A DNA stretch of 64,000 bases, from the NCBI RefSeq assembly GCF_006345805.1, contig NC_043007.1:16492001-16556000 (forward strand). Reading direction: 5' to 3'. The translations under genes and the position numbers were made by a program. Source of the DNA: Octopus sinensis (lineage: Eukaryota). How positions within the stretch are numbered: position 1 is the stretch's first letter; every line of letters begins with the position of its first letter. Below, one piece after another: positions 15,960 to 61,010 of the stretch. The notes under the pieces were generated by a model. That model did no database searches and was not told where the DNA came from. It saw only the letters and a program-made list of their open reading frames with translations.

Positions 15960-16264
15960 CATACATACATGCATATATATATATCTATATATATATATAT
16001 ATAGATACACATATATATCTATATATATATACATATATATCTATATATATATATACACATATATCTATCTATCTATATATATATATATATATATTATAGA
16101 TACACATATGTATCTATCTATCTGTATATATATATATAAACTTGTATGTATATATATATATATATTATATATATATATATAGATACACATATATATCTAT
16201 CTGTATATATATATATATAAACTTGTATGTGTATGTATATATATATATATAACTTGTATGTATG

Positions 16265-16296
<32 letters not shown>

Positions 16297-16440
16297 AACT
16301 TGTATGTATGTATATATATTATATATATATATAACTTGTATATATATATATATATATATATATAGATATATATATATATATAGATACACATATATATCTA
16401 TCTATCTATCTGTATATATATATATATAAACTTGTATGTA
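15960..16440. repeat. Compound TA microsatellite with repeated aacttgta units
   Basis: Directly visible; ends about 55 nt before the 16497 acceptor. Confidence 0.95.
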
Positions 16441-17081: not shown

Positions 17082-17460
17082 GGCGTAGGAGTGGCTGTGT
17101 GGTAAGTAGCTTGCTTACCAACCACATGGTTCTGGGTTCAGTCCCACTGCGTGGCATCTTGGGCAGGTGTCTTCTGCTATAGCCTTGTGAGTGGATTTGA
17201 TAGACGGAAACTGAAAGAAGCCCATCGTATATATGTATATATATATGTGTGCATATATGTTTGTGTGTCTGTGTTTGTCACCCCAACATCACTTGACAAC
17301 CGATGCTGGTGTGTTTACGTCTCCGTAACTTAGCGGTTTGGCAAAAGAGACCAATAGAATAAGTACTAGGCTTACAAAGAATAGGTCCTGGGGTCGATTT
17401 GCTCGACTAAAGGCGGTGCTCCAGCATGGCCACAGTCAAATGACTGAAACAAGTAAAAGA
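17082..17460 (+). mobile_element. tRNA-derived SINE S1 (central TA/TG tract)
   Basis: Head ggcgtaggagtggctgtgtggtaag...ggttcagtccc; tail ...tgactgaaacaagtaaaagag; many copies in the window. Confidence 0.9.
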
Positions 17461-20356: not shown

Positions 20357-21565
20357 TTAAATGCATTTTCAAACTACCAATATATATATGTATATATATA
20401 TAGTGTCTAGTTTGGGGGGAGTTTCAGTGGTATACACACACACCTAAATATATGAATGTGATATACAAAATATTTATATGAAAGCTTTCAGTGTCAATAT
20501 ATGAAGGTATGAGATAAATGAAAGTATGTGGTGTGGTCAGATGATAATACGTGATGTATTATAAATAGCTGTGGGATATGTTATACAAACATGTGATACG
20601 TCCTTGTTGTTTAGCTCAAAGTTAGCCCTCATCAAGTAGATGTATAGCATATATGTTACATGGAAGTATGTGTTGTGTGAAGGTGTGTGATATGTACATG
20701 TGCTGCATAGTTGTTATTGCTGTTCTTGTTGTTGTTTAACCTTGAGTTAGCCCTGATGAAGCAAAACTATGGATGGCCAAAGGAGTTCTAATTTCGATTA
20801 TCCCATCTTTTCTGTATATCTAAGACATTTTCTAATGCATCCTTCACTTTTTAAGCCAATTGGCTGTTATTTGAGGATGGTGTGACTCTTCTATCTAGTG
20901 GGTCAGGCGACCACATAGAGAGTCTCTTGTCAGCTCATTACATTATAACATTTTATAGTTATGTATAGCATTATATATGAAAGTGGAGGGAAGATCCAGG
21001 AAGACATGGAACAAAGTATTGAGCCTTACAAAGGAGATGGCAGGGGACCAAGATATGTGGCATATCGCTGTACTCAAGAAAACCTGCCCATCACAACAGA
21101 ACTGAGATCCTATAACCAAGGTGCCACATGAAAACCACTGGTGCTTGTGCCATGTAAAAAAACACCCAGTACACTCTGTAAAGTGCTTGGCATTAGGGAG
21201 GGCATCCAGCTGTAGAAGCCAAGCCAAATCAGACTATGGAACCTGGTGAAGCCCTTGGTCTTACCAGTTCTTGTCAACCCATGTCAGCAGGGAAACCAGA
21301 TGCTAAATATTGATGTTGATAGTGATGATGAACATTATATAGTTATATATAACATTATGTATTATAGCATTATACGGTTATAAGGTGTGTGTGTGTGTGT
21401 GATGTACTTTCATAGTAATGTGGTTAAGAATTTCCCTTTGGAATCATATGACTTAGGAATACTAAGCATTATAGAATTAAAGAACAGTCAGGTATCCTTT
21501 AAGACTTTCCCGAAATATAAAGAAAATGACATTTATCTATTGTATTTTTTCATCTTCATTTTCAG

Positions 21566-22257: not shown

Positions 22258-22500
22258 GGCACGTAAAAAGCACCATCCGATCATGGCCGTTTGCCAGCCT
22301 CGTCTGGCACCTGTACCGGTGGCACATAAAAAGCACCCACTACACTCACAGAGTGGTTGGCGTTAGGAAGGGCATCCAGCTGTAGAAACACTGCCAGATC
22401 AGACTGGGCCTGGTGCAGCCTTCTGGCTTCCCAAACCCCAGTCAAACCGTTCAACCCATGCTAGCATGGAAAGCGGACGTTAAACGATGATGATGATGAT
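22258..22500 (+). mobile_element. SINE S3
   Basis: Same core and tail. Further degenerate copies: 17737-17930(+), 21040-21330(+), 24191-24356(-), 42505-42555(+), 46906-47190(-), 56340-56450(-). Confidence 0.85.
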
Positions 22501-22589
22501 ATATATATGGCTCAGTGGTTAGAGTGTCGGACCCTCAATCATGAAGTAATGAGTTCAATTCCCCCATACTGTGCTCTTGAATTCATTCA

Positions 22590-22942
22590 ATCTATAATAT
22601 AAATTGGAAATGGGCGATTGTTGTATTCTTTCTTGTCTTGAGGTTCACAGCCAAACGGCTGGGGGGATTCGCGTGAAAAAGGGCACACATGTGGAGATGG
22701 GTGCATAGATTGGAATGCAGTTTGTATTTTTTTCCTAGCCCCCATACTTACTGAGAAAATCGATCTGAAGCTGTTTTCTGACAGGGTGGGCCAGGAAATT
22801 TTCATACAGCTGGAGGCTCCAATCGGAACAGGGGACCCGAAATGATAAGGTTGAGAAACGCTGTTATAGATTATGCCTAACCGAAAACGATCAAAGAGAC
22901 ATCATCCAAACAGACCGGGTGAAACCAGGCTTAGCTGCTAGT
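22590..22942 (-). mobile_element. Non-autonomous Helitron/Helentron-like element
   Basis: Begins ACTAGCAG plus a GC hairpin, ends TTTATATTATAGAT on the minus strand; classification inferred from terminal architecture. Confidence 0.55.
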
Positions 22943-23004
22943 ATATATATATATATATATATATATACGTGTGTGTATTAATCATATTTTCTATTATATT
23001 TCAG

Positions 23005-23121
23005 GATTTAGATTGAGTAACAATAACTTCCAAGCGCTGGTAATGCGGTACAGTAATGAGGATGGTTCAATCTCATTTGTGGACTTCATTGTGTGTGCTA
23101 TTCGTCTGAAATCAATGCTCA
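23005..23121 (+). CDS. CAPN: Calpain PEF exon (EF4)
   Basis: 117 nt, (G)FRLSNNNFQALVMRYSNEDGSISFVDFIVCAIRLKSML; tttcag acceptor, A|gtaagt donor. Confidence 0.96.
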
Positions 23122-23223
23122 GTAAGTTAACGTTTCTTCACTTACATGTCTTTAAGTCATAATGGTTTACATCTGCCCCCTGACCCAGCAAATAAGAAAA
23201 ATGCAATTAACCTTTACTGTACA

Positions 23224-24169: not shown

Positions 24170-24654
24170 GTAAGTTTTTTTTTTTACTGATCATCATCAT
24201 CATTTAACATTAGTATTTCATTCTGGCATGGGTTGAATGGTTTGACAAAATCCAAGACAGAGGACTGCGTTGAGCTCCATGCCTGATTTGGCATGGTTTC
24301 TATGGCTAGATGCCCTTCCTAATGCCAACCACTTTTCAGAGTGTACTAGGTGCTTTAAGATCCCTTGATGTGAGAGGATGTTGAGAGAATTGGCTTTTGC
24401 CAGGTGTTGAGCAACAGGAGTATGATAGAGAGATGGGAATAGGTATCTACCCCAGTTGGAGAAAATCTTATAGTAATGAGCTGTGAGGACATACCCGCAA
24501 GTTACAAGAGTGTGAATATGAAGAGAATGGGGACAGAGGAATAGGTGAAAGGGATAGGGGTAGAGGCTCGGGCAAGTTCACAAGAGTATTAGGTGAGCAA
24601 CAGCTGGCTAGAGGGAGGGAATATAAATGATACAATGAACGGTAAGCTCCCTCT

Positions 24655-25034: not shown

Positions 25035-25683
25035 AGAATGGTAAGCAGGGAAGAAAAAGAATAGCATAAACCTGCAAATTGGTGGTTGTTGTTGTTATTG
25101 TATAACCCAGGTTAATCCCAATTTGAACAGACTAATGATGAAAGATATTCAGGCTTTGACCAACCTATGTTTGTTTCAGATCTAATGTACATATAGAACT
25201 GCATTATCTTGCATACAACATGTTTCCTTCACTTTTTGAAACGGTAGAATGTGATTTGAAAACGATTCTCTGCTATTTTTAGCTTAGCTTTTAAGCTCAT
25301 TGACAGGTTATAAGTGTCACACTAAAAAAACCTTACATTATCTATTCCATTGTTCTTTATTCCTATTTCAAGAATTTAATGGTTGGATAAGTGCCTACTG
25401 CTACTGTTGTTGTTGCCCGGGGGCTCAGTTCTGACCTGTGTACATATTGTGGCTTGGTATGAACAAATAAATACTATAGAGCCAATGCACTGATTTTACC
25501 AGGGACCTCTAATGCTGCTATGGTGGCCCTGCATTTAAGGCCATGCTGGTGCACTGTTCCATATATAAGAGGTGTACTCTGATTTGAGTTAAAGTTGAGG
25601 TGGAAGTTATTCAAAAGTGAAATAGTTCCTCACTCAGAAGTGGGAATTTAAGCATTTCGAATGCAATATTTAGTATATTTTAT

Positions 25684-26148
25684 AGGTGTAGGACTGGCTG
25701 TGTGATAATAGCTTGTTTACCAACCACATGGTTCTGGGTTTAGTCCCACTGCGTGGCATCTTGGTCAAGTGTCTTCTACTATAGCCTCGGGCCGACCAAA
25801 GCTTTGTGAGTGGATTTGGTAGACGGAAACTGAAAGAAGCCCGTCGTATATATGTATGTATGTGTGTGTATATGTTTGTCCCTCCAACATTGCTTTACAA
25901 CTGATGCTGGTGTGTTTACATCCCCGTAACTTAGCTATTCGGCAATGTTTGTGTCTGTGTTTGTCCCTCCAACATCGCTTGACAACTGATGCTGGTGTGT
26001 TTACATCCCCGTAACTTAGCTATTCGGCAAAAGAGACTGATAGAATAAGTACTAGGCTTCCAAAGAATAAGTCCTGGGGTCGATTCGCTCGACTAAAGGC
26101 GGTGCCCCAGCATGGCTGCGGTCAAACGACTGAAGCAAGTAAAAGAGA
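25684..26148 (+). mobile_element. SINE S1 with an internal 73-bp duplication
   Basis: Same family as 17082; segments 25873-25945 and 25958-26030 are duplicated. Confidence 0.88.
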
Positions 26149-32820: not shown

Positions 32821-33210
32821 CTCTTTACTCGTTTCAGTCATTTGACTGCGGCCATGCTGGAGCACCGCCTTTTAGTCGAGCAAATCGACCCCGGGACTCA
32901 TTCTTTGTAAGCCCAGTACTTATTCTATCGGTCTCCTTTGCCAAACCACTAAGTGACGGGGACATAAACACACCAGCATCGGTTGTCAAGCAATGCTAGG
33001 GGGACAAACACAGACACACACATATATATATATATATGCATATATACAACAGGCTTCTTTCAGTTTCTGTCTACCAAATCCACTCACAAGGCATTGGTCG
33101 GCCTGGGGCTATAGCAGAAGACACTTGCCCAAGATGCCACGCAGTGGGACTGAACCCGGAACCATGTGGTTGGTTAGCAAGCTACTTACCACACAGCCAC
33201 TCCTGCGCCT
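32821..33210 (-). mobile_element. SINE S1
   Basis: Reverse complement of the S1 head and tail. Confidence 0.9.
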
Positions 33211-33851
33211 TATATATTTCAAAATATATTCAAACAAGACAATTCATGAGAAAACAAGCTTGGATTTCCAGCTGAACTATTGGAAAACTGAAACTGTGAA
33301 TGCCAGAATTGTGAGCATTTCAGCTGAGTGGTTCACTGGTAAAAAGTGGAAAATTTTGCATGGACATTGCCCAATCAATACATCGCCACTACAAAAATTG
33401 AGCTCACATTTTTACCTCGAATAGTATTTACTCATTGCTGTAGATAAATAAATAAAAGAATAAAAAGACCCTGCAACTTTTAAATGACACCTGGACAAAT
33501 TCCTTCAAGAACACCAGAAAAACTGAGAAATGCCAAGCTCAGGATACATTTCCTCTTAAGTACCTTCTTACTTGGCTGAGCTATCATGTCCCAAAACGTG
33601 ATATATGGTAAAGAAGGCATTAATATAGTGGTTGTAGCAATCCAAGAAATTTTAATTTAAATTACACTTATTGGAGAGAAAGAATCATAATGACTGATTT
33701 TGGTAAAAATATAAAAGTGACAATCCCAGAAATTAAATTAAAAAAGGTGCAATGTGGAGATGTTTGATTTTAGCCTTACAGTGACAACTCCAGTCAGGTT
33801 CTGGGTTTATTAGAACTCATCAGTGAAGCATGGTCTATTATTTACCAGATC

Positions 33852-34613: not shown

Positions 34614-34962
34614 CATCATCATCGTTTAACGTCCGCTTTGCATGCTAGCATAGGTTGGACGATTCAACTGGGGTCTGGGAAGCCAGAAGGCCGCACCAGG
34701 CTCCAGTCTGATCTGGCAGTGTTTCTACAGCTGGATGCCCTTCCTAACGCCAACCACTCTGAGAGTGTAGTGGGTGCTTATTACGTGCCACTGGCACGGG
34801 GGCCAAACGAGGCTGGCAACAACCACAATCAGATGGTGCTTTTTACTTGCCACCGGCACGGAGGCCAGTAGGGGCGGCACTGGCAACGGCCACGTTCGGA
34901 TGGTTCCCTTACATGCCACTGGCATCACAGCTACAATTTCCATTGATGTTAATCGATTTTGA
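34614..34962 (-). mobile_element. SINE S3
   Basis: Reverse complement of the S3 core and tail. Confidence 0.85.
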
Positions 34963-35407
34963 TTTATAGGAGACAAAGCCTATTGAAATAGGATTTAATG
35001 AAATTGGCAATAAGTAACTAGTTACATACTTGTTTATAGTAGTAGCATAGCTGGAGGAGGGGTACTTTGTGGGGTTTGTAGTATAAGCCTGTGTAGGGAG
35101 CATGACACACTCTAGATATGCAACTGGTTTGCAGAACATCTACACTACTTGCAAGGCAGGAAATTTACAATCCATACAAGTCAAACCAGACCAACAGTTC
35201 TTAGGGAACTGTGGGACTTGGATTATCTCAACTTACTTTGGATATTTGATAAATCATGGATGAGAACAATACCGAGGCTGATGCATTTTCACAACCTGGT
35301 GCTCTACACAACCTCATGTATTGATCTCACATGAATGGCCAATGAGGAACTTGTCTCATTGATAAAGGTGTGATACATTACATAGATTACCATGTACATC
35401 TCTTGAC

Positions 35408-35752
35408 TCTCTTCTATTTGTTTCAGTCATTTGACTGTGGCCATGCAGGAGCACTGCCTTTAGTCAAGCAAATCAACCTCAGGACTTATTCTATCAGTCT
35501 CCTTTGCCAAACCGCTAAGTTACAGGGACGTAAACACACCAGCATCGGTTGTAAAGGACAAACACAGACACACAAACATATATATATACTATGGGCCTCT
35601 TTCAGTTTCCGTCCACCAAATCCACTCACAAAGCTTTCGTCGGCCCAAGGCTATAGTGGAAGACACTTGCCCAAGGTGCCACGCAGTGGGACTGAACTCA
35701 GAACCATGTGGTTGGTAAGCAAGCTACTTACCACACAGCCACTCCTACGCCT
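35408..35752 (-). mobile_element. SINE S1 with internal deletions
   Basis: S1 head and tail recognisable. Confidence 0.85.
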
Positions 35753-38700
35753 ATACTGCTGAAGTTTTTAAACATACTAGACAAACTCAAAAATCGATGA
35801 TTTCAAGATATAAACAACCTGGAATTAATCAAGATGTACGCCGTGGGTCAGAAATTGCACGAGATTACGCTGTTCCACGACTTAACACATTTTGTCAAAT
35901 TTCTTCCTCTTCTGATACTTGTACTTACATTAGGATAAGAGATCGTTATATAGGAGAACCAGAAGCCACACCCATCATACAAGAACCTTAGAGCATTGAA
36001 TTTTTTGAGCTGATGTTCCTTTTAGCATCATAAATGACATTGCTCAGGTACTTTGAATCAACATTTTTTCTCAACAACCAACCACTTTCAATTACAACTA
36101 ATATGCAGACATAAGTCAAGGTCATAAGTCAGCCCTAATTGCTGGCATTTTGTTGCTGTTAGGTTATTTGTAAAACAGTGAAACGACATGGAAACTAACT
36201 GAACAGTTTCTACTGCCTCAATCAAACACTGCCACTGGATGCCAGCCCCTTATGTTCATCTGATTGAGACCACAGATGGCAGACATCCCTCAAAGTGTTT
36301 CAGTGGTACCGACAATTGATTGTACTCATGCTTTTCTTCAATTTTCCTTTATGAGAGAAGATAATTAAGATACTATTGCAGCCATCAAATTCAGTATTAC
36401 GGTTATTGTTCAAATGTCCCCAACTCACAATGAAATTTTTTAAAATACTGATTTTACTTGAAAGTTGCCTTCCTTGACAAAAAAACTCACATCTACCTTT
36501 CTTAGTTTTGCATGAGGGACAGTTGAGAAATAAGACAGGCCTCATTTAAGAGCTTGTATAGACATGATGAAGGCAACCCATGCTTCAGCCCAAGTGCTTT
36601 ATATGAGAAATTGACTGGATTCAATGAAAATAAAATTTATTAAACTCTAGAAGACTGCTTCTGTTAGGAATGGCAGGTTTCTAAATTCTCTACAAATTTT
36701 TGTTTAGGCTGTTAATGTAGCAATGGCAACCTGCAGCATTTCTTTGGGAAATTGTTTGTCAATTAGAGACAGTAAAACTGCTTTCATTTCTTGTAGTAAC
36801 TACTAATACTTGAGTGCATGTACGTTAAGTTCATCACAAGAAGTATTGAAAGCAGATTTACTGCTTTTATATAATTAAACAGGGTTAAGCAATATCATAA
36901 ATACTTATGAATTCTGTCTTGATGAAATCTTTTCTTATTCTCTATGGAATGTTATTTCCAGTTAAAAAGTATGCTTATTTTTCACCAACGTAGCAATATC
37001 TATGCTAACTAGAAAGACTCGTATAATACATTTTTTTTTTTACAACAGTCAATTGACTTTGTAAACACAAAATATGTCAACCTTGCTTCTATTAAGGTTA
37101 AAATGTGAAGGATCTGATTTTTCTACACTTGAATTACTGCCCACAATTTTTCTAACAACCACATCTTTTAACTGTATTATTGTGCCCACTTAGTGAAGAA
37201 AAGGTCTACACTGCTGGTGGCATAGACAAAATTATGTAATCATAGTCAATTTATTTTCAACAAAATGGTGATTATGGACACAAACAGAACTTTTAACTAA
37301 AAAATTCTGAAGCAGACCCATTTCAAACGAAACCATCTGTGATGAATTCTTTATACAATCATAGTCACAAATTTTCAACAAGTGAAAAATTGCGATTAAG
37401 TTGGTAAATTCATTCTCCACATCAACCATTGCAGGAATTATTGGATATAAGGTGATTTTTATATCATGTTCCATAGTTAAGATTAAGAGTAATAAACACT
37501 TCTATACGTTCAAAAAAAAAAAAAATTTTTTTTTTAAACCCTTAACGAAGTTTTTTTTTTTTAATCAGATTCTGAGATTTTCGCAAAATATGACAAAACC
37601 AATATTCCAATAATTTCCACCTGTGTCACTAGAAGAGAAAACTCATCTGTAAACAGCTGTACAGCTCTATATTAAGTCTTAATTGATAAGAGCTGAGATG
37701 ACTGCAATACAAATTTTAAATACTTCCATGAGTGTTGCCCAATGACACCTGGTCTACACCTGAATGCCTTGCAATAGATGCAACACATGAAAGTTAAGTC
37801 TTCACTTTACAGGCTCCACTTCAGTCAAGCTTCCACAATATCGAAATTAGGAAGAGATTTCAAAATTGACCAAGACTCAACCTACAAACATAGGTAAAAA
37901 TTAGTCTTTTTCTAAAGAATCAGAAGAAACTAGAAGGAAGACAAAGAGGCACTACTCGGACATTTCATCTAATTCTACTTACGACCTTCAGAAATATATG
38001 AATGTCATGTACATTTTTCTCGGATGTCCGTGAGATGTTTTCCCTATATAATAAATAAACAGATTCTCCTTAACTTCACATTCATTGACCTATCTATTTA
38101 CAGAATTTCCAAATTTTTAATAACCTTTTAGCTGCAATCTCGCTCAATAATACTGACCTTTCTTACTTTTAGGTTTGATAGGTCATAATTTCCTTCAAGA
38201 CTGCTGAAGTTCTTAAGTACAACAACACAGTTGTTCAGCTACAGTAACATTTTTGCCTCTTTTAGAAGAGAGACAGAGAGAGACATGTAATTACCTTTAT
38301 AATCTTACTAATCAATACTGTGGCAGCAATCACGGTACAGCACTCTGCAACAGACAGGAACATAACATATTTGCAAATTACAGTTACTGACATCATAAAC
38401 AATTACATTCAATCCAATTAATAAACAGTCATTCTCGTTAGACTGTGATGCAATGTACAATGTACCTTTGATTACTGAAACCACCATCAGTAAGGCTTTC
38501 AAGCTTACTTTTGTTTTCAGGGGAAGAAAAAAAAAATTCTATTTATATTTAAAATTTTATTTTTCATTTATCTGATTGTGAAGACTTTACATTTTTGAAG
38601 TATGGTTTTTGATGATGCTTTTTGCAAATGATCAACATGTGCAGAAGAGATGACATTAGCAATTATGTGTAGAAAAGTATTGACACTTGGCAAATGCTTA

Positions 38701-42122: not shown

Positions 42123-42249
42123 TTAGTCTCTTCCTCCAGCAGCTGGCATCTGAGCTGGTACCACTGTGCTGACAGGCTGTTTTCCTGACATCGGGCGAAT
42201 TAACGGAGGCGGCGGTTGCTGTAGTATGGTCTTCGGTTGAGGAAGCAAC
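42123..42249 (-). CDS. RCOR: REST corepressor, terminal coding exon
   Basis: Strong pyrimidine tract + tag; (R)LLPQPKTILQQPPPPLIRPMSGKQPVSTVVPAQMPAAGGRD-TAA; PPPLIRP resembles the RCOR3 C-terminus. Confidence 0.9.
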
Positions 42250-43530
42250 CTAAAAAGAGAAAGAAAAACACTGATGAAACTGAACAAAAGAGTGACACAA
42301 ATAAAGACAATAAGCGACACCAGACACTTCAAGCAGACAATATTACTTAACAATTGACTAAACTTCAACCAGCCACCCACATTATTGGTTATTAAAGATG
42401 GATAATCAAAACAGGATCATGTGATGATTAAACAATTTGTTTATGAGGATATAAACTAATCTGAGACAGCACTACGTTACTGAAAGAATAAAATAAGATG
42501 TGGCCGTCCAACCCATGCTAGCATGGAAAGCGGACGTTAAACGATGATGATGATGTAAATTCTGAATTGTGGTGAACTTAATAATACTTAACACCACAAT
42601 CTCTCAGCAATAACATCTGTATACTCATACATATATATGGATACATATTACACACATGGCATAGGTGTTACATTTTATTATAACTTCCACAAAATGATAT
42701 TTTATTAAAATATCAAAGCTACAAAATGCATGCTGTGTCGTGTGTACGCAAGTAATATCAAATCACTTGAAAATATAAGAAACCAACAACAAAAGCAGTT
42801 TTTTCCTTCCTACCACCCCCCACCCCAAAAAATGATTTAGGCCAAGAGAGTTTGTAGGCATCAATAAACATAATTACTGTGATGGATGAAGAATATTAAA
42901 ATATTTGAAGTTTTGCATGTCAGATTCTTTTCCACACTTCTCTGTAATTAAACCTACTAACACCTACTACAATCCACCTTGAAGTTATTACCATTATTGC
43001 TGATACAGATCTCCAGCCCTTTTGAGACTAACTTGCATGAGATCACGTCTGGTTCTCACAACAAAAACCTCTCTTTTGAGAAATTGAAACTTTAACTTCA
43101 TGTTATAAAAATAGATTTCATAAATTTACTGAATCTACCTAAATCCTTAATATCTTTTAATATTAATGGAAACGCATGGGTAGTTGTATTCCATTAAGAA
43201 TATAGTCACAAAAGGAGTATATAGCAAACAAAAAAAGTTTGAGGTTGAGGAGCGTATGAGTAGTTTAACATCTTTATATCTGGTTTAAAGAAACATTAGC
43301 CAGAAATTAAATGTCAGATGTAAACAGATTAACCATATTTTAATCAAAATGATTTCAGAGTCTAAAATAATTAGAGAAATTAAACTAATTGAAGTTAGTC
43401 TTTGCTAATAATTGCACATTCAGACAACTACAACTATGCTGTTACAAAGACGACACTGAGTTTTACAAGCCCACGGGGCAGACGCGACAGTTCGTAAGTG
43501 AGAAAAAACCGTTTTGAAATGCACCTGTAC

Positions 43531-43742
43531 CTCGGGTGTTGAGATGCTTGGGAATTATTCCCCTTCGTGATAGGCACTTGCGGCTGCTTGAGCAAGGGAG
43601 GGGGAGCCGGTGTGCCAGCAGCCGTTGGGGTAGCATTCCCACTACCAGAAGCTGGCAGATTAGCTACCGACTCCTGATTTATAGGTGGTGGGGATGAAGA
43701 TGCCGCAGCACCATCTGTTGAAGATTTGCCATCAACATCCAT
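43531..43742 (-). CDS. RCOR: REST corepressor, Ser/Ala/Pro-rich exon (donor at 43530, or 6 nt further at 43524)
   Basis: ttttcag acceptor; MDVDGKSS...PAPPPLLKQPQVPITKGNNSQASQHP(R); both candidate donors are phase 2. Confidence 0.85.
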
Positions 43743-44142: not shown

Positions 44143-44345
44143 CTTTTCAATATCTTTTTTTTCTTCTTCTTCCTCTTCTTCTTCTTTAACTGAGTCTGTT
44201 CCATGTTCGCTCTCATACTCAGCCAAGACTTCATCTAAATTATACCTGCGTCTGTAATTTATAAAAAAGTTACGCACATGTGCTTCAAGTTTATTGCCAA
44301 TCACTTCAGCAATAGCCTTGAAATCCTTTCCATAACGACGAACAC
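44143..44345 (-). CDS. RCOR: REST corepressor, SANT2
   Basis: (G)[67 protein letters not shown]. Confidence 0.97.
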
Positions 44346-44556: not shown

Positions 44557-44614
44557 CTTGCACTGCAAGCAATAGTTCATCATTAGTCCAACGAGAATTT
44601 ATTCTCTGAGTAGT
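44557..44614 (-). CDS. RCOR: REST corepressor, SANT2 start
   Basis: 58 nt, TTQRINSRWTNDELLLAVQ(G). Confidence 0.96.
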
Positions 44615-45274: not shown

Positions 45275-45352
45275 TTCTGGTGGTCTCCATTCATCTATTC
45301 CAGAACTTGTTTTGTGTTTCTGCATACTTATGATCTGTTTGTTGTTTTGAAC
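45275..45352 (-). CDS. RCOR: REST corepressor linker exon
   Basis: 78 nt, VQNNKQIISMQKHKTSSGIDEWRPPE; tag / gtaagt. Confidence 0.94.
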
Positions 45353-46437: not shown

Positions 46438-46654
46438 CTGTCGTTTTAAAGAGACAAGCTCTGCATCTAATGACTTTAAAATTTGTTCAGCTTGCTGTAG
46501 TGGTCCAGTGAGCATTAACCTGAGGTCATCTTCATTCAAATACATGCCACGTGGCGGCTTTCGTTTATGTCGCATAGGATTATGCCGATGCTGGCTATGC
46601 TGTTGTTCACGACGCTTGGTCGGTCCAGTACTGGATTTCATTACACCAGTTCGC
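46438..46654 (-). CDS. RCOR: REST corepressor, LSD1-binding linker exon
   Basis: (R)RTGVMKSSTGPTKRREQQHSQHRHNPMRHKRKPPRGMYLNEDDLRLMLTGPLQQAEQILKSLDAELVSLKRQ; KRKPP.GM.L and L..L..ELVSLKRQ are RCOR motifs. Confidence 0.96.
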
Positions 46655-47762
46655 CTAATAATTTGTAAATATATATATATAATTTAATATATTAAATAAA
46701 TTCAAGATTATTGAAAAGGTTGCAAGACGCAACGAAAACTTTAGGTAAATAAAAATAAGAAATTAGTGGAAATTTTACCAGTGAGTGTGTTACATTATAA
46801 GGCCCAGACACAACTAAATAAATTCAGATTTGTGTAAACTACTTCAAGAAAAAAATATTATTTTACTTCCTTCACTCCCTAGATTTTAATAACAAATGGA
46901 TCTACCATCACGATCATCATTTAACATCCATTTCCCATGCTGGTATGTGTTGGACGGTCTGACAGGATAGCTCCTATCAGCCAGGAAGCTGTCCAGATTC
47001 CAAGTGTCTGTGTGGCATTGTTTCTACAGTTGGATGCCCTTCCTAACACCAACTATGTTACAGAGTGTACAGAGCCACTGGCTCAGGTGCATTTACATGG
47101 AACCAATACAAATGTATTTTATGTGGCACTAACACCTGCAAAGGACAAGCCTGTATGTATGGCTGGCAGTGATTTTACTCAGCCAATCAAAATATTGAGA
47201 AATAAAGAAGGTAACAACCAACAAGATTAAATTTGAACATAAGACAATGGTCATAAAGAAAAACACGTTACCATGAATCTACACTGGAATGCATGTGTGT
47301 GCCAGTCCATCTTGCCTTTTAGACACACAGACAATCAAAATTGGCTAATACAATGAAAAGGCTGGAAACGAAATAATTTCCATAATACCTGAATTCAAAA
47401 CTGCCTCAGTTTTAGCAGGTGAAGAAACAATTAAATAATTCCAACATTATTTGTGTGCCATTACTTCTGTTTTTCAGGTTAACTGTATAAAGAACCCTAT
47501 CAACATATTGCTTTCAAAGGAAATTTGGATGCGTGGCAAATTGTAGCTTTAGAATATGTGCGAATGCATCCAGCCTGCCTTTAAGGCACATAAACATGCA
47601 AAACATAGCTACTACTAGAGATTCTGACAAGTTGTGGTGCACCTGAGCACTGTATACAATAATTTCATTATTATTATTATAATTTCTGTACCTCCTCAAC
47701 AAATAAAATTCTGCTGTTACTAGCTTTACTGTTAAAGTAAATACAAACTTATGCAGATTTAA

Positions 47763-47972
47763 CCCTTTAACATCTAAACTGACCAAAGCATTCTACCCGT
47801 TTTATGCTCAAACTGGCCAGATTTTGCCTCTCACACCTACCCTACAATGTCATTCTACAAATAAACAATGACATCATCACAATTTCAAAAGTACAAGATA
47901 ATGTATGATTAATTCAAAACAATGTAGATAAATAAGTATTACATTTGAGAAATAAATCTGAATGCTAAAGGA
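47763..47972 (-). mobile_element. piggyBac-like MITE family B, reverse orientation
   Basis: TTAA flanks; reverse complement of the family B body. Confidence 0.8.
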
Positions 47973-49003
47973 TTAAGCAAATTTTCTACAAATTGATTAA
48001 AACCACAATTATTTTCATATTCAGAATCTTAAAACTTTTACCAATTTAAAAACTATGTGAAAAAGTTTCACCTTCAGTCTCTCAAAATCTTTCTAAATTA
48101 AGATCATTTGCTAGAATAAAGCAATGTATTTTAGACAGTTTTCTCATAACTATTAAATATATATACATATTTTTCATGGTTTTATAAAACAAGTTTAACC
48201 TTTTAGATTTTATACATCAAAGTGGTGTTTAGAGCAACTTAAAAGATTCTTATATAGATCTATATCAAAAAGTCTGTCACAAAATCTACTTGTATTATAG
48301 GTAAATACACGCAATAATCAGTGAAATATAAAATTATTTAAACTTTGCCTAAATGATAATCACCATATCAAGAATTACAGGCCAATATTCAGCAGGAGTA
48401 AGACAATAGTATAACACTTCAAAGAATTGTACACATAGCTGGATGTTCAATTGAAGTAAAATACCAAAATGCTCAAAGAATACTAAAAAATTATACATAC
48501 ACAAACACACACAACAAAACAATAAAAGATTAACTTTATATAATTAAGCAGAATCTGTCACTCATCAAACAGGTAAATTGACAAACTGAAAACCAGGTAA
48601 ATTTGAAAATATATTTTATAAAAATAAATTATATAACTTCCTAATGTGTATGATTGTATTTATAGCAAAAATAATGTACTATTTTCTTTCAGTGGTGCAG
48701 GAGTTCACAGTTTGTCCTTTTACTTTTTTTCCTCTTACAGGAAAAAGAAGGAGAAACTTTTTTATTGCAAGATTAATTCCACTAGTCTTGCAAAATAATG
48801 AGTGGGTTTTAAGTCTTCAGGTAAACTGACTGGGATCAGTATCTTCAAAGGGGGAAGAAAAAAAATTTGGAAAAGAAATATTTTAAAAGTTTTCATTCCC
48901 CACTGCATTCTTTCTGCCTTTAATTCATCATCACTTTCATTACTGATGTCCAGGTCGTTTCACTATCACAAATTGCAACATCCAATTCATGTCCGCCACA
49001 CAG

Positions 49004-49073
49004 TTATGCTTGTTGCAATTCTTCATTTGCTGCAGCCACTTTTTCTTCAAATTCATAGTTGCTACTACTAAAT
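49004..49073 (-). CDS. RCOR: Candidate alternative terminal coding exon of RCOR
   Basis: Four AGs (49074, 49068, 49065, 49062) all join the phase-2 donor in one frame: (R)FSSSNYEFEEKVAAANEELQQA-TAA; AATAAA at 48761-48766. No transcript evidence available. Confidence 0.45.
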
Positions 49074-49421
49074 CTTAAGATGGAATCCATTTTTTATAAA
49101 GGGTAGAACATTATGAAAAAAAAAAAAAATAAAAATAAAAAGATATATAACCAAAAAAATTTGGTGAACACAAAATTCACACTCAAAAGGTTAAAATATA
49201 GGGAACACATTTTCCTAAATCTTATAAACTGACCTTAACATAAGGACAGGATGACTAAAATCGTAGCTCACACTGGTTTTCATCCAGCTATCTTCATACC
49301 ATAAATCTAATAATTAATGCCAAATCAATTAACTGGTCCAACTATTTCAGATGCATAATCCTTGAAGTAGATTTTAAAGTTAATTTCAATATGGCTTTTA
49401 CTACAACGAATTTCCACTTAC

Positions 49422-49531
49422 CGCAAATATTGATTGCAACTATTGCACAGAGATCCTTTTGCGGTTGAATGGAGTTGAGAAGAATGCATTCCACAATTGG
49501 TACAACTTTTGCTATCTTCACCTCTGCTGGT
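49422..49531 (-). CDS. RCOR: REST corepressor linker exon encoding a GATA-like C4 zinc finger
   Basis: 110 nt, TSRGEDSKSCTNCGMHSSQLHSTAKGSLCNSCNQYL(R); tttcag acceptor, CG|gtaagt donor; phase 0 in, phase 2 out as the neighbours require. Confidence 0.9.
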
Positions 49532-49641: not shown

Positions 49642-49708
49642 CCCATTCTCTTTGTTATTCTCAACATCACTATCAGAGTTTCTACTTCCTTCATCCGATG
49701 CACCATCA
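49642..49708 (-). CDS. RCOR: REST corepressor, acidic linker exon
   Basis: 67 nt, (S)DGASDEGSRNSDSDVENNKENG; phase-compatible on both sides. Confidence 0.85.
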
Positions 49709-49913: not shown

Positions 49914-50038
49914 CTGTCTCCATCACGTGGATGTCCAGCCAGTTTTTTAGCCTGGCGATCCATAAGACTTGTTCTTGACCTGGTTTTCTTCCAGGAGTAA
50001 TAATACTTTACTAAACTAGCAATGGATTTATCTGGAAG
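49914..50038 (-). CDS. RCOR: REST corepressor, SANT1 end
   Basis: [41 protein letters not shown]; ag / AG|gtgatt, ends in phase 2. Confidence 0.97.
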
Positions 50039-50757: not shown

Positions 50758-50919
50758 CATTTGCCTGATCCTCTGAAAACTTTTCCCATGGAAGCTAAAT
50801 GCCTGTTCAAAAAGAACTTTATCTTCAACAGTCCACTCATCAGGAAATGGAGTAAAGTTTGGTAAGTCTGCTAATGCTTTTTCTATGTTGTGTTTATGCC
50901 AAAACAGCATACCAAGAGC
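50758..50919 (-). CDS. RCOR: REST corepressor, ELM2-SANT1 exon
   Basis: 162 nt, [54 protein letters not shown]. Confidence 0.98.
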
Positions 50920-52885: not shown

Positions 52886-52938
52886 CTGCTCCATGTTGTA
52901 GCCATGTTTCTCTTTTGCGATAGTAACATAATCATCAA
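52886..52938 (-). CDS. RCOR: REST corepressor, end of ELM2 domain (5'-most exon found)
   Basis: 53 nt, (x)DDYVTIAKEKHGYNMEQ; tgcag acceptor, CAG|gtaatg donor; matches RCOR DEYIAIAKEKHGYNMEQ. Confidence 0.95.
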
Positions 52939-55560: not shown

Positions 55561-58500
55561 ATGTAAGTTTAGCAAGCTGTTTTTAGCACAGTAGAATCTT
55601 AAAGAAGTAGCATTTCATAGATGCAATGGCTCACAACAAATAGCACATGTTGGAATGCCAACTCATTCAGCCAATACCATCAAAGTTGACTGTTCTGTTC
55701 ATCTTTCAAAATAACCTCTCATTAGTGTGCTTAGCATTTACTAAAGTACTCAGTTGTAAGACATCTAACCTAATAAGATTAAAATTTTTCAGACAATTAA
55801 CCTTCTCTTTAGATGAAAAAGTTTTTTCAGATTTACAACTCCACATTTCAATCAGCTTGATCACTAACCATCAGATGTTTTATCCCTGGATGTGTATGCC
55901 ATACAGGATTTGAACTAGGAACCTTTATTACTAAATCAGGAGTAATAATGTTCTTGCCCACTAAGCTTTAATGGAATGTAGCATACAAATAAATACTGGA
56001 AAATGCTTCATCTCTAAGGATGAGATTAATAGTCTGAAAAATTATAATCTTATTAATAACTCATCTCAGATATTAATCTAACCTAAAATTGAACATGAAA
56101 ATGTCATTTCTAAAGCTTGGTGCATGCAGACTGTTTGAAATCTATTTCATATTGAACACAATCGTTTCTGTGTTGCTAATTACATTACACCCTTATACAT
56201 TTTAATTAAATTCTAAAATAATCAATGAATTTAGACTGGTTTCATAAAACTATTTTTTTATTCATTTATTGATATATAAAAGGTTCTCAGATAAATCTAT
56301 TAATTAAATTTTTCTCACAGAAATACTATTTTTCATGTTTCTCTTTTTTAGAATAGGTCCACTAGGCTTCTGCACTTTATAAGATGCAACAAAAAATGTT
56401 GGTACCAGAAAGGGCATCTGGCTGCAAAACACTGCTTCAAAAAGTTCCAGACTACTAATTACAATTAAGAGATAAAATCTGAATACAAATTTATTCAAAC
56501 TTTGTGTAGATGGAATCAAGTGTAAATAATTGATGAGTTTGAGTAATGAGAATAATTGGCAGAGTAGGGCTTCTGAAAATTTTGGTAGAAAAAATATTGT
56601 TTTCACACCATTCTCTTTCTAGAAATCTCTGCCTTCATTATCACTGTCTCACGTTGTTTACATACCTGGGAATCGAAGCACCCGGTTTACATATTATTAC
56701 TAGGAACTACAAGCAATTGTGTAGGTATGTCTTCTGTGACTCTTATTGCATTGATACTGAAAATTTTGAAATTAAATGACTATTCAACTAACAAAGATTA
56801 TGTTATACCTAACAATTACACAAATATTGTACATCAAGTGGAACCATTTTATGAAGGTCTGTCTCATTCCTATTCAGCTAAAATAGATTGTTTCAATGAA
56901 TTAAATAATAATGTATTGCAAATTAAATTTTTATGAAGCTATCATACCTCAATTATTGCTGGTTTCAAACTAATGAAATGCAATGGGGCTGACACAGAAT
57001 ATAAAGTTTGGAAGACAACTACTTGCTAGTTAATGTATAAATATGGTTAGGTGTTATCACTTTTCTTCCTGGCAGGTGTTAATTTATATGAACTACTATT
57101 GATATGCACTACTTTCTGAGAAAATATTAATAACTCTGGAAATCAGTTTTGTTAACCCTTTCGTTACCCACTTGTCCACTGTTTCATGTTGTCATGCAGC
57201 AAATCTGAATTGGGATGATTTTCAAAAGATATGAAGAAATCTAGTGAAATATACAGCAAACATAAAAACTACAGGTGTGGTTGTGAATCAGATATTTTGA
57301 TTTTCAAAAGTGAAACCAACTGATTCTGACAGCAATAAAGAAGTGAATTTGTACATGAACGCAGTAAGAATTTGAAAACTGCTTTCATAGTGATTTTTCA
57401 GAAGAGACCAGACCTAATCTATTTTTTAAATATTTACTCAAAATTACAATATTATAGATAATCCACGAACGTGCCCAATTCTTCTATATTCAAATTTTTG
57501 TTGTATACTCAACTGATAATTAGCTAATAAGTCAGTTTCTATGGTGTTGTTTAAACAAAATTTAATTTTATATTTTGTTGTATTTAACTGTAATTAGATT
57601 TGCTTTGAAACAAACCAAGCAATAGATTTTGGTTGGAACCTCTTGTTAGATTTTGTCCAAAAATCATTTGTATGTCAATAAATAAAAAAAAAAAAGAGTT
57701 GTCTTATGACACCAGTCTAAATTCACAATTATTTTTTCATTTAACGGAAACACATAAGGGGTGTATTTTTGTTAGAAATATAATAAAGAAAGGATTAAGA
57801 GAGATGTTAACAGTTCAATTTACAAGGAACACTGAAGTACATGAACCAACATTTGCCACTGGTTGGCTTGGACAATTTTTCCTTCACCTCCCAGCCCTTT
57901 TTTTTTTTTTTAAATTGTGCCCTTCTAGAAATTATTTGTAAATAGATTGTCACTACTTACTTCTTGATTCACATAGATCAGCATTGGGAGCCCACACAAG
58001 CATAGCATCAGTCCGTACATCATTCTTGCCATCTTGAATGAAAATAAATACATGAAGATAAAAAAATGTTTAAAAATCTGGAGGATAAATTTTCAAATAA
58101 TGTAAACTGTTAAAAACAAACATTATTCTACAAATCATCATTATTGTCATGTTTGTAATTTCTCTGATTTGTAAGTGCTTTAAAAATTATAAATTAATAA
58201 AACTAAAATATTTGGTATTGAAACCTAATTCTTTAAAAATTGCTCTACATCTACTTTCCAAAACGGTTTCTATTTATGTATATAAATTGTTGGACAAAAT
58301 ACTTTTAAAGCTGGATTTTATTTCATGCAGCTAACCAATAGATTGTGAACAGAGAGAGGACAGAAGAAAGTAATACAATGTAACACCTTTCAGACAGCAA
58401 TTGTATAAATTTAGAAAACCATGTGAAAATGAAAATAAAAATCTAAGTTTAATCATTAAAAAAAAATGATTATTAGTATTAGATTAAAATCATTGCAATA

Positions 58501-58984: not shown

Positions 58985-59275
58985 TTGGTGGTACATAAGA
59001 AGCACCATCCAAATGTGGCCAATGCCAGTGCTGCCTTGACTGGCTCCCATGCAGGCGGCACGTAAAAGCACCATCCAAATGTGGTTGATGCCAGCCCCCT
59101 CTGGCCCATAGAACCCACTACCCTCTTGGAATGGTTGGCATTAGGAAGGGCATCCAGCTGTAGAAACAGTACCAGGTCAGATTGGAACCTGGTGCAACCA
59201 CCTGGCTTCTCAGACTCCAGTCGAACCATCCAACCCATGCCAGCATGGAAAACGGATATTAAACGATGATGATGA
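58985..59275 (+). mobile_element. SINE S3
   Basis: S3 core and (GAT)n tail. Confidence 0.83.
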
Positions 59276-60533: not shown

Positions 60534-60701
60534 AGGCGCAGGAGTGGCTGTGTAGTAAGTAGCTTGCTAACCAACCATGATTGCGGGTTCAGTCCCACTG
60601 CGTGGCATCTTGGGCAAGTGTCTTCTGCTATAGCCCCGGGCCGACCATGCTTGTGAATGGATTTGGTAGACGGAAACTGAAAGAAGCCTGTCGTATATAT
60701 G

Positions 60702-60746
<45 letters not shown>

Positions 60747-60758
60747 TATATATATGTG

Positions 60759-60798
<40 letters not shown>

Positions 60799-61010
60799 TG
60801 TGTTTGTGTGTCTGTGTTTGTCCCCCGAGCATTGCTTGACAACCGATGCTGGTGTGTTTACGTCCCCGTCACTTAGCGGTTTGGCAAAAGAGACCGATAG
60901 AATAAGTACTGGGCTAACAAAGAATAAGTCCCGGGGTCGATTTGATCGACTAAAGGCGGTGCTCCAGCATGGTCGCAGTCAAATGACTGAAACAAGTAAA
61001 AGAGTAAAGA
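60534..61010 (+). mobile_element. SINE S1
   Basis: Full length; abuts an inverted copy. Confidence 0.9.

What the first reader, a model, noticed from the sequence alone, without database searches (positions are those of the whole stretch)
46620..49531. CoREST with a GATA-like zinc finger inserted between SANT1 and the LSD1-binding linker
Seen: exon 49422-49531 plus the start of exon 46654 encode CTNC-GMHSSQLHSTAKGSL-CNSC-NQYLRRTGVMKSSTGPTKRR, i.e. C-X2-C-X15-C-X2-C with a basic tail. Established: GATA fingers are C-X2-C-X17-20-C-X2-C (e.g. CTNC...CNACGLYYKLHGV); the related ELM2-SANT corepressors MTA and RERE carry GATA-like fingers, while I know of none in human RCOR1-3. The loop here is short and lacks the WRR DNA-contact motif. 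Inference: an ancestral or lineage-specific DNA/protein-binding module that could target HDAC/LSD1 without REST. The finger sits on its own exon (phase 0/2).
Basis: partly seen in the sequence, partly recalled or inferred. Interest (0 to 1): 0.7.

Follow-up and report, generated by a model that had tools for sequence, protein, structure and literature searches.

The report
Ancient GATA-like zinc finger in CoREST
The octopus CoREST co-repressor gene does carry a small GATA-like zinc finger on its own exon, but this finger is an old feature of animal CoREST proteins that vertebrates lost, and it was already noted in worms and flies, so it is correct and tidy rather than new.

Summary
On the minus strand, exon 49531-49422 (110 nt, AG/GT sites, phase 0 to 2) plus the start of exon 46654 encode CTNC-X15-CNSC followed by a basic tail. 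They sit between SANT1 and the LSD1-binding helix of an octopus CoREST gene. My spliced model is 100% identical to an annotated REST corepressor. Skipping the exon breaks the reading frame, and spliced transcripts of a related cephalopod contain it.

It is a divergent GATA-type finger. Pfam GATA is the best hit but sub-threshold. A profile of orthologous fingers hits only GATA fingers in PDB (E 2e-7). The AlphaFold model matches GATA3/GATA4/AreA fingers.

It is neither an insertion nor mollusc-specific. The same finger occurs in Trichoplax, cnidarians, echinoderms, hemichordates, amphioxus, arthropods (including Drosophila), rotifers and nematodes. It lies on the same exon with the same intron phases in Trichoplax, sea urchin, Tribolium and octopus. 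Vertebrate RCOR1-3, a sponge, a flatworm and Capitella lack it.

A 2022 preprint already described it in Caenorhabditis RCOR-1/SPR-1 and noted it in Drosophila.

The most likely role, by inference only, is low-specificity DNA/nucleosome contact in the tether between the HDAC and LSD1 lobes.

The parts
49422..49531 (-). Finger exon (110 nt, phase 0 -> 2). Encodes TSRGEDSKS-CTNC-GMHSSQLHSTAKGSL-CNSC-NQYL plus the first 2 nt of an Arg codon.
   Evidence: sequence, splice sites, frame. (100% match to the annotated protein). (transcript alignment 49519-49428).
49436..49504 (-). Span holding the four zinc-ligand Cys codons: 49504-49502, 49495-49493, 49447-49445 and 49438-49436.
   Evidence: sequence. 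Invariant in 63/63 orthologues.
46438..46654 (-). Next exon (217 nt). Encodes the end of the finger helix and the conserved RTGVMK turn, the basic tail KRREQQHSQHRHNPMRHKRKPPRG, and the start of the LSD1-binding helix (Pfam REST_helical).
   Evidence: Transcript alignment 46655-46436.
46655..49421 (-). Intron of 2767 nt between the finger exon and the next exon. It contains one copy of an interspersed repeat (about 46880-47300).
49642..49708 (-). Acidic Ser/Asp-rich exon (SDGASDEGSRNSDSDVENNKENG), the disordered spacer before the finger. A 110-nt intron follows it.
   Evidence: pLDDT below 50 for residues 188-223.
49914..50038 (-). Exon for the second half of SANT1 ([32 protein letters not shown]...).
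50758..50919 (-). Exon for the end of ELM2 and the first half of SANT1 ([54 protein letters not shown]).
52886..52938 (-). ELM2 exon ((I)DDYVTIAKEKHGYNMEQ).
57961..58032 (-). ELM2 exon ((D)GKNDVRTDAMLVWAPNADLCESR). The more 5' exons of the gene lie beyond the window end.
45275..45352 (-). Linker coiled-coil exon (VQNNKQIISMQKHKTSSGIDEWRPPE).
44557..44614 (-). Exon for the start of SANT2 (TTQRINSRWTNDELLLAVQ).
44143..44345 (-). SANT2 exon ([49 protein letters not shown]...).
43524..43742 (-). C-terminal low-complexity exon (boundaries approximate).
   Evidence: tblastn (43745-43518)..
42123..42248 (-). Last coding exon with the stop codon (boundaries approximate).
   Evidence: tblastn (42254-42126).

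Best explanation
The feature is the octopus copy of an ancient, divergent GATA-type (C4, treble-clef) zinc finger that belongs to animal CoREST proteins.

Anatomy (shown or predicted): it is a folded module of about 35 residues. A disordered acidic spacer of about 40 residues ties it to the HDAC1/2-binding ELM2-SANT1 unit. A basic stretch of about 22 residues ties it to the LSD1-binding helix and SANT2.

Origin (inferred): it descends from a canonical GATA finger that followed ELM2-SANT in a pre-animal co-repressor, the same arrangement still seen in MTA and RERE. In the CoREST line the loop shrank from 17-18 to 15 residues and lost the Trp-Arg-Arg DNA-reading residues. It kept the zinc knuckles, the helix, the G-V-x-R-P turn and a basic tail.

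Most likely mode of action (inference, not shown): together with the basic tail it makes low-specificity contacts with nucleosomal or linker DNA. This would help seat the two-lobed deacetylase/demethylase complex on chromatin. It probably does not read GATA sites.

Vertebrates lost exactly the finger-exon-sized piece.
For: Identity of the gene and exon.

GATA-type by sequence:
- Pfam GATA is the top hit for the octopus finger (E 3.6e-4, 20.5 bits).
- 40 of 63 orthologous fingers hit GATA at E<=0.01, the best at 1.1e-7.
- All 10 PDB sequence hits of the octopus finger are GATA fingers.
- A profile of 63 CoREST fingers has GATA factors as its 16 best PDB hits, led by GATA3 at E 1.9e-7.

GATA-type by predicted fold:
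- The AF2 core has pLDDT 81-91, with a beta-hairpin followed by a helix.
- The top 14 Foldseek PDB hits are all GATA fingers. The AreA finger aligns at rmsd 1.8 A over 38 columns with TM 0.72.

Independent module on disordered tethers: in the full-length model, residues 231-260 have pLDDT 91-93, while residues 188-223 and 264-285 are below 50.

Ancient and under selection:
- Present in Trichoplax, corals, jellyfish, Hydra and sea anemones.
- Present in echinoderms, hemichordates, amphioxus, molluscs and chelicerates.
- Present in insects including Drosophila and Tribolium, in rotifers and in a nematode.
- Invariant residues are the 4 Cys and a Gly. N17, K30, G31, R43 and T44 are kept in at least 90%.
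- The exon has the same boundaries (5' phase 0, 3' after 2 nt of the Arg codon following Y-x-Y-W/L) in Trichoplax, sea urchin and Tribolium, and octopus.

Link to the ELM2-SANT-GATA architecture:
- hhalign of the finger profile against the human MTA1 finger gives probability 88%, E 2.9e-6, with all Cys in register. The MTA1 sequence was verified against PDB 7ao8_D.
- The ichthyosporean Chromosphaera 'CoREST-like' protein has ELM2, a weak SANT-like stretch (Pfam DUF7952 only, E 0.0088, no Myb/SANT hit) and a canonical GATA finger (58 bits) at the same place. hhalign to the CoREST finger profile gives probability 93%, E 3.7e-7.

DNA-backbone-type residues are kept, base-reading ones are lost:
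- Kept: R28 72%, G31 92%, R34 81%, P35 46%, matching GATA K-x-x-G-V-x-R-P.
- Lost: there is no loop W or RR, and the Asn after Cys3 is kept in only 42%.

The same role is proposed in the literature for the MTA1 finger, namely DNA binding probably without sequence specificity and possible contact with nucleosomal DNA (PMC4244562; PMC7736783).
Against: - No experiment shows zinc or DNA binding for any CoREST finger. Darragh & Rifkin state that there is no evidence RCOR-1/SPR-1 bind DNA.
- The octopus finger falls below Pfam's GATA gathering score (20.5 vs 26.8 bits).
- The loop is 2 residues shorter than any canonical GATA finger.
- The finger has been lost repeatedly without loss of the gene: in vertebrates, Capitella-type annelids, Macrostomum and Oscarella. 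It is therefore dispensable in some contexts.
- Predicted insect isoforms omit it.
- The most conserved motif (Y-x-Y-W-R-R-T-G) could equally be a protein-binding surface.
- The Chromosphaera protein lacks the LSD1 linker and SANT2. It may therefore represent the common ELM2-SANT-GATA stock rather than CoREST proper.
Confidence: 0.55

Rival explanations
1. The finger is a protein-protein interaction module. It would work like the GATA-1 N-finger that binds FOG, or like the MTA finger region implicated in RBBP4/7 binding. It would recruit a partner (a transcription factor, LSD1/HDAC surface or histone) rather than DNA.
For: - The best-conserved positions form a surface-type motif on and after the helix (Y24 77%, Y26/H26, W27 81%, R28, R29 86%, T30 83%, G31 92%). 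This goes beyond what zinc binding needs.
- The base-contacting residues of GATA factors are not kept.
- The MTA1 finger region was mapped as one of the RBBP4/7-interacting regions (PMC4244562).
- Darragh & Rifkin list protein-protein interaction as one possibility.
Against: - No partner is known.
- The finger is followed by a strongly basic tail and keeps the G-V-x-R-P turn that contacts DNA in GATA factors.
- Vertebrate CoREST assembles the same LSD1/HDAC complex without the finger (and the PDB entries listed there).
Confidence: 0.28
2. The finger is a sequence-specific DNA-binding domain that targets the HDAC/LSD1 complex to defined motifs without REST or other recruiting factors.
For: - It is homologous to a sequence-specific DNA-binding fold.
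- It has a basic tail.
- The conserved Leu in the loop (L11, 51%) corresponds to a DNA-contacting Leu of GATA factors (alignments).
- The ichthyosporean relative has a fully canonical GATA finger.
Against: - The loop Trp and the two Arg are absent in all CoREST fingers.
- The Asn after Cys3 is kept in only 42%.
- The helix positions that read bases in GATA factors (L, L/H) are Q and R/T here.
- The octopus copy is below the Pfam GATA threshold.
Confidence: 0.1
3. The finger is a purely structural hinge element. As a rigid zinc-stabilised knot in the tether, it would set the distance and geometry between the HDAC lobe and the LSD1 lobe without binding any ligand.
For: It lies between two disordered segments exactly in the inter-lobe tether. 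It has been lost several times without loss of the protein.
Against: A spacer would not need surface residues, or the exon boundaries, to be conserved from Placozoa to octopus.
Confidence: 0.06
4. The finger is an artefact: a chance Cys pattern, or a mis-annotated or intronic exon that is not part of the mRNA.
For: None beyond the short length of the motif.
Against: - The exon is required to keep the reading frame.
- It is present in spliced transcripts.
- It is identical to the annotated protein.
- It is conserved across phyla.
Confidence: 0.01

Closest known systems
Atypical GATA-like zinc finger of Caenorhabditis RCOR-1/SPR-1 (CoREST homologues), Darragh & Rifkin 2022 preprint
   Same: - Same protein family.
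- Same position between SANT1 and SANT2.
- Same C4 pattern, and no Trp in the loop.
- The authors note 14-15-residue loops in other nematodes and Drosophila, and absence from vertebrates. The octopus X15 finger fits this.
   Different: - Caenorhabditis loops are 16-23 residues, and their intron falls 36 nt into the finger. In octopus, Trichoplax, sea urchin and Tribolium the whole finger up to Y-x-Y-W sits on one exon.
- The preprint favours convergent origin and an origin 'in invertebrates'. The data here point to descent from a GATA-type finger and presence before the placozoan/cnidarian/bilaterian split.
GATA-type zinc finger of MTA1/2/3 (NuRD scaffold), C-terminal to ELM2-SANT
   Same: - Same domain order: ELM2-SANT-finger.
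- hhalign probability 88%, E 2.9e-6, with all four Cys aligned.
- Very similar post-finger motif: CASC-WTYW-KKYG-GLK vs CxSC-YQYW-RRTG-xMR.
- Also divergent from GATA factors and suspected to bind DNA non-specifically.
   Different: - The MTA1 loop is 20 residues and keeps a Trp.
- MTA has an N-terminal BAH domain and no LSD1-binding linker or SANT2.
- hmmsearch of the CoREST finger profile did not list MTA1 at E<=10.
Canonical GATA transcription-factor fingers (GATA1-6, AreA; Pfam PF00320)
   Same: - CxNC...CxxC zinc knuckles.
- A beta-hairpin plus helix fold in the model.
- The G-V-x-R-P turn and a basic tail.
- These are the only significant PDB hits by sequence profile (E 1.9e-7) and by fold.
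   Different: - The loop is 15 residues rather than 17-18.
- The invariant Trp and the Arg-Arg are missing.
- The Asn after Cys3 is not conserved.
- The octopus copy is below the Pfam gathering score.
- It is embedded in a co-repressor scaffold, not a transcription factor.
Vertebrate RCOR1/2/3 (human CoREST)
   Same: Orthologous ELM2, SANT1, LSD1-binding helices and SANT2. The flanks of the finger (acidic SDSD..KE(N)G on the left, (R)HxxQHRHxxxxxK(R/C)(K/R)PP(K/R)GM on the right) are still alignable.
   Different: The piece corresponding to the finger exon is simply missing. Human RCOR3 has 16 residues where octopus has 49.

Membership tests
CoREST / RCOR co-repressor family | ELM2 domain followed by SANT1 | tested here: met
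   Pfam ELM2 (partial, because the 5' exons lie outside my model) and Myb/SANT on the spliced model. Full ELM2 is on record for P0001.
CoREST / RCOR co-repressor family | LSD1-binding helical linker (Pfam REST_helical) followed by SANT2 | tested here: met
   REST_helical E 2e-30 at residues 228-293 of the model. Second Myb/SANT at 303-346.
CoREST / RCOR co-repressor family | Orthology to characterised CoREST proteins | tested here: met
   100% identity to the annotated octopus REST corepressor. Human RCOR3 and RCOR1 are the best PDB sequence hits (E 2e-145 and 1.5e-123).
GATA-type zinc finger (Pfam PF00320) | Four Cys in the pattern C-X2-C-X17-20-C-X2-C | tested here: not met
   The four Cys are present and invariant, but the spacer is 15 residues. 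Among the fingers surveyed, 162 of 187 have X15.
GATA-type zinc finger (Pfam PF00320) | Score above the curated Pfam gathering threshold | tested here: not met
   The octopus finger scores 20.5 bits against a cut-off of 26.8. 40 of 63 orthologues hit at E<=0.01, best 1.1e-7, and amphioxus and Saccoglossus carry precomputed PF00320 hits.
GATA-type zinc finger (Pfam PF00320) | GATA fold: zinc knuckle, beta-hairpins, then an alpha-helix | tested here: met
   This rests on an AF2 model only. The core has pLDDT 81-93. The top 14 Foldseek PDB hits are all GATA fingers.
GATA-type zinc finger (Pfam PF00320) | Invariant loop Trp and Arg-Arg, and the Asn after Cys3 that contacts bases | tested here: not met
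   The loop reads Q-L-H-x-T-P-K-G, with no W or RR. The Asn after Cys3 is kept in 42% of orthologues; octopus has it.
GATA-type zinc finger (Pfam PF00320) | Zinc binding, and binding to (A/T)GATA(A/G) DNA | not testable with these tools
   Needs metal analysis and EMSA, SELEX or protein-binding microarrays.
Atypical GATA-like finger of invertebrate CoREST (rcor1 clade of Darragh & Rifkin) | C4 motif between the two SANT domains of a CoREST orthologue, without the loop Trp, and with a 14-15-residue loop outside Caenorhabditis | tested here: met
   compared with the description.
MTA/RERE-type ELM2-SANT-GATA module | A finger immediately C-terminal to ELM2-SANT that is homologous to the MTA finger | tested here: inconclusive
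   The position is the same. hhalign gives probability 88%, E 2.9e-6. However, hmmsearch did not list MTA1, no tree was made and RERE was not compared.

The most novel reading that the evidence does not exclude
ELM2-SANT-GATA would be the ancestral holozoan co-repressor cassette, and the fingers of CoREST and MTA (and probably RERE) would be homologous relics of it.

In almost all non-vertebrate animals, CoREST would then still carry an intrinsic DNA/nucleosome-binding finger. This would give the LSD1-HDAC complex a recruitment or positioning mode that does not depend on transcription factors.

Vertebrates would have removed it by losing one ancient exon. From my own knowledge, this happened in the same lineage in which REST appears.

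If so, the human CoREST structural and biochemical model would be missing a domain that is the rule in animals.
Probability: 0.3. Interest if true: 0.6.

Novelty: new member of a known kind. Interest (0 to 1): 0.38.

Why it matters
CoREST is studied almost entirely through the human proteins, which lack this finger. Even a 54-species survey of CoREST does not mention zinc or GATA (PMC9400249).

The finger is a conserved, separately folded, exon-defined module from Trichoplax to octopus and amphioxus. The 'canonical' three-domain picture of CoREST is therefore the derived vertebrate state.

If the finger touches DNA or nucleosomes, it changes how LSD1/HDAC targeting should be thought of in flies, worms, cnidarians and molluscs. 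It also links CoREST, MTA and RERE to one ancestral ELM2-SANT-GATA design.

For the window itself, nothing unusual is going on. It holds an ordinary orthologue of a feature already in the literature.

Tried and rejected
- Chance motif or gene-model artefact: rejected.
- Mollusc- or cephalopod-specific insertion: rejected by the survey.
- A plain regex (C..C.{10,26}C..C) suggested that sea anemones lack the finger. The alignment showed they have it, with a C-X4-C first knuckle (CANFHC in Nematostella).
- hmmsearch of the finger profile against PDB did not list MTA1. Only hhalign against the verified MTA1 sequence showed the relation.
- The look-up of encoding contigs had no record for amphioxus P0047 or Nematostella P0302. 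Exon structure was therefore checked in Trichoplax, sea urchin and Tribolium instead.
- My first coordinates for the acidic exon and for the end of the 46654 exon were off by one. They were corrected.
- Representatives without names (P0146, P0165, P0166, P0171, P0193, P0154) could not be assigned to taxa. I ran no further search on them, so tunicates, cyclostomes, ctenophores and choanoflagellates remain unchecked.
- The 'viral' fold library was not used because it is irrelevant here.
- Pfam on two calpain-like fragments elsewhere in the window gave only a weak hit.
Full report
**What is in the window**

The region lies on the minus strand of an AT-rich (about 33% G+C), repeat-rich animal genome. 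The window is 100% identical over 22.9 kb to an octopus chromosome record, GCA_006345805.1 CM016869.1. The same protein is also encoded in the Octopus vulgaris assembly GCA_951406725.2.

Exon 49531-49422 is 110 nt long. It has a strong acceptor (tcctttcag|) and a consensus donor (|gtaagt). It opens in phase 0 and ends after two bases of an Arg codon. The next exon starts at 46654 behind attattag|.

Joined, the two exons read TSRGEDSKS-CTNC-GMHSSQLHSTAKGSL-CNSC-NQYL-R-RTGVMKSSTGPTKRREQQHSQHRHNPMRHKRKPPRGMYLNEDDL.... One correction applies: the second exon continues to 46438 and encodes the first LSD1-binding helix.

**The gene**

tblastn with human RCOR1, followed by reading the splice sites, gave a chain of exons from 58032 down to about 42123.

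Pfam on the spliced model finds REST_helical (E 2e-30), two Myb/SANT stretches and a partial ELM2. The model is 100% identical over its whole length to P0001, a 554-aa protein annotated 'REST corepressor [Octopus vulgaris]'. The first exons of the gene lie beyond position 64000.

**Is the exon real?**

- Leaving it out shifts the frame and gives a stop 15 codons later.
- P0003, a cephalopod protein 88% identical and carrying the finger, is an uninterrupted ORF on three ~2-kb contigs from three sequencing runs. These are intron-less, so they must be spliced transcripts.
- One of those contigs aligns to the window exon by exon, with 49519-49428 followed directly by 46655-46436.
- A coral orthologue with the finger is likewise on a transcript-sized contig.

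**What kind of finger?**

By sequence:
- Pfam GATA is the best family for the 60-aa piece, but below threshold (E 3.6e-4; 20.5 vs 26.8 bits).
- Of 63 orthologous fingers, 40 hit GATA at E<=0.01, the best at 1.1e-7.
- Against PDB sequences, all ten hits of the octopus finger are GATA fingers.
- A profile of the 63 fingers has GATA factors as its 16 best PDB hits, led by GATA3 at E 1.9e-7.

By predicted structure:
- An AlphaFold2 model from that alignment is confident in the core (pLDDT 81-91). It shows a hairpin followed by a helix.
- Its 14 best Foldseek matches in PDB are all GATA fingers. The AreA finger aligns at rmsd 1.8 A over 38 columns.
- In the full-length model the finger is an island of confidence (pLDDT 91-93 for residues 231-260). 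It sits between segments below 50 at residues 188-223 (acidic) and 264-285 (basic).

The fold assignment therefore rests on profile similarity plus a predicted structure. Zinc binding has not been shown.

**Distribution**

In the 120 best homologues, 112 have the motif at the same place. These span molluscs, an annelid (Owenia), nemerteans, a brachiopod, chelicerates, myriapods, crustaceans, insects, amphioxus and hemichordates.

An exhaustive profile search of 1.84 billion representatives, plus a second homologue search, added the following taxa:
- echinoderms (six genera);
- Trichoplax;
- corals (Pocillopora, Acropora);
- a jellyfish (Rhopilema);
- Hydra;
- rotifers and ostracods;
- the nematode Romanomermis;
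- Tribolium and Nasonia;
- Drosophila.

Sea anemones, including Nematostella, have the finger with a C-X4-C first knuckle.

The finger is missing from:
- all vertebrate-like representatives (RCOR1/2/3 types), although both flanks still align;
- the sponge Oscarella;
- the flatworm Macrostomum;
- Capitella and three similar sequences;
- one unnamed sequence.

Some predicted insect isoforms (Musca X2, Scaptodrosophila X3, Trichogramma X5) omit the finger together with the first linker helix.

**Conservation within the finger**

- The four Cys and one Gly are invariant. N17, K30, G31, R43 and T44 are kept in at least 90% of sequences.
- The consensus is C-S-N-C-G-x-x-x-S-Q-L-H-x-T-P-K-G-S-L-C-x-S-C-Y-Q-Y-W-R-R-T-G-V-M-R-P.
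- Octopus is slightly aberrant, with NQYL where the consensus has YQYW. Similar replacements occur elsewhere (Ischnura YQYL, corals YQFL, Rhopilema NEYL).

**Gene structure**

In Trichoplax the finger is on its own 104-nt exon. That exon starts in phase 0 after ...SNG and ends ...YQYW-AG|gt. Sea urchin and Tribolium have the same two boundaries and phases, and so does octopus.

Several mis-spliced predicted isoforms (amphioxus, Ptychodera, Cloeon, Strigamia) carry insertions exactly at YQYW|R. The 'finger exon' is thus older than the placozoan/cnidarian/bilaterian split. What vertebrates lack corresponds to this exon.

**Relation to other ELM2-SANT proteins**

- The human MTA1 finger, with its sequence verified against PDB 7ao8_D, aligns to the CoREST finger profile with all Cys in register (hhalign probability 88%, E 2.9e-6).
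- MTA1 shares the post-finger motif: CASC-WTYW-KKYG-GLK vs CxSC-YQYW-RRTG-xMR.
- Representative P0265 is the Chromosphaera perkinsii protein that Gahan et al. used as a 'CoREST-like' query. It has ELM2 and a canonical GATA finger with WRR (58 bits) at the equivalent position, preceded by only a weak SANT-like Pfam match (DUF7952, E 0.0088). It matches the CoREST profile from ELM2 through the finger.
- This favours descent from a canonical GATA finger in an ELM2-SANT-GATA ancestor. It argues against the convergent origin proposed by Darragh & Rifkin.
- No tree was built, and RERE was not compared.

**Literature**

- Darragh & Rifkin (bioRxiv 10.1101/2022.05.20.492891) already describe an atypical GATA-like finger between the SANT domains of Caenorhabditis RCOR-1/SPR-1. 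They note shorter (14-15 residue) loops in other nematodes and Drosophila, absence from vertebrates, the missing Trp, and the lack of any evidence for DNA binding.
- Full-text searches found no other paper describing it.
- The Nematostella CoREST paper, which surveyed 54 animal species, never mentions zinc or GATA.
- For the MTA1 finger, reviews and cryo-EM work suggest non-specific DNA or nucleosomal DNA contact. They could not place the finger in density.

**Mechanism (inference)**

Compared with GATA factors, the finger keeps the residues that shape the fold and touch the DNA backbone. These are the CxNC knuckle, the loop Gly, an aromatic pair on the helix, a basic residue at the K position, and the G-V-x-R-P turn, followed by a His/Lys/Arg-rich tail.

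It has lost the residues that read bases. The loop Trp and Arg-Arg are gone, and the Asn after Cys3 is kept in only 42% of sequences.

It sits in the flexible tether between the HDAC-binding and LSD1-binding halves. I therefore think the most likely role is low-specificity DNA/nucleosome contact that helps position the complex.

- A protein-interaction role is the main rival.
- I put the domain identity at about 0.95 and the DNA/nucleosome role at about 0.45.

**Verdict**

The 'insertion' and the novelty are not. This is an ordinary orthologue of a known, although under-appreciated, feature of non-vertebrate CoREST.

What this analysis adds is threefold:
- a pan-animal distribution;
- a conserved finger exon;
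- detectable homology to MTA and canonical GATA fingers.

Noticed in passing
window 46880-47300 (intron after the finger exon); also about 4868-5026, 11564-11707, 21169-21246, 22356-22504, 24190-24346, 34618-34754 and 59131-59270: An interspersed repeat family with eight copies at 68-78% identity, on both strands. It translates in part to ...LQLDALPNANHS.... One copy lies inside the finger-exon intron.
   Followed up: partly
window 17047-17277, 25673-25894, 33000-33421, 35346-35759 and 60570-60857: A second dispersed repeat, seen as recurring pseudo-ORFs (...RGYSRRHLPKMPRSGTEPRTMWLVSKLLTTQPLLRL...). It was not characterised.
   Followed up: no
window about 860-1330, 2350-3430, 12250-12570 and 16120-16400: Long TA/CA-rich microsatellite tracts. 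They translate to [10 protein letters not shown] runs in several frames.
   Followed up: no
window 449-613 (+) and 22935-23159 (+): Two open segments resemble the penta-EF-hand C-terminus of a calpain (EDMEINSYELRDVLN; MRYSNEDGSISFVDFIVCAIRL). Only the second gave a weak Pfam hit (CAPN13-like_C_EFh, E 0.0037). This is probably a neighbouring gene on the other strand.
   Followed up: partly
window 49422-49435 (codons NQYL): The octopus finger helix reads NQYL, where nearly all orthologues, including cuttlefish and squid, have YQYW. Two of the best-conserved aromatic residues are replaced.
   Followed up: partly
L003 about 880-890 (transcript encoding P0003): The related cephalopod transcript encodes YQYW-RTG, with one Arg fewer than YQYW-RRTG, exactly at the exon junction. 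This would fit use of an alternative acceptor 3 nt away.
   Followed up: no
P0302, P0295, P0293 (sea anemones): Sea anemone CoREST fingers have a C-X4-C first knuckle (e.g. CANFHC in Nematostella) instead of C-X2-C. This hides them from simple pattern searches.
   Followed up: partly
P0131 (Musca), P0143 (Scaptodrosophila), P0139 (Trichogramma), P0130: These annotated insect isoforms skip the finger together with the first LSD1-binding helix and go straight from the acidic spacer to ...(K/Q)NKQ.... They may be finger-less, LSD1-linker-less CoREST variants.
   Followed up: partly
P0265 (Chromosphaera perkinsii, residues 282-315): The single-SANT 'CoREST-like' protein of this ichthyosporean carries a fully canonical GATA finger (Pfam 58 bits, with WRR) after ELM2 and a weak SANT-like stretch. 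The paper that used it as a query does not mention this.
   Followed up: partly
P0118 (Capitella), P0088, P0092, P0094, P0157 (Macrostomum), P0190 (Oscarella): These are apparent secondary losses of the finger outside vertebrates. The annelid Owenia keeps it. Gene-model error was not excluded for each case.
   Followed up: partly
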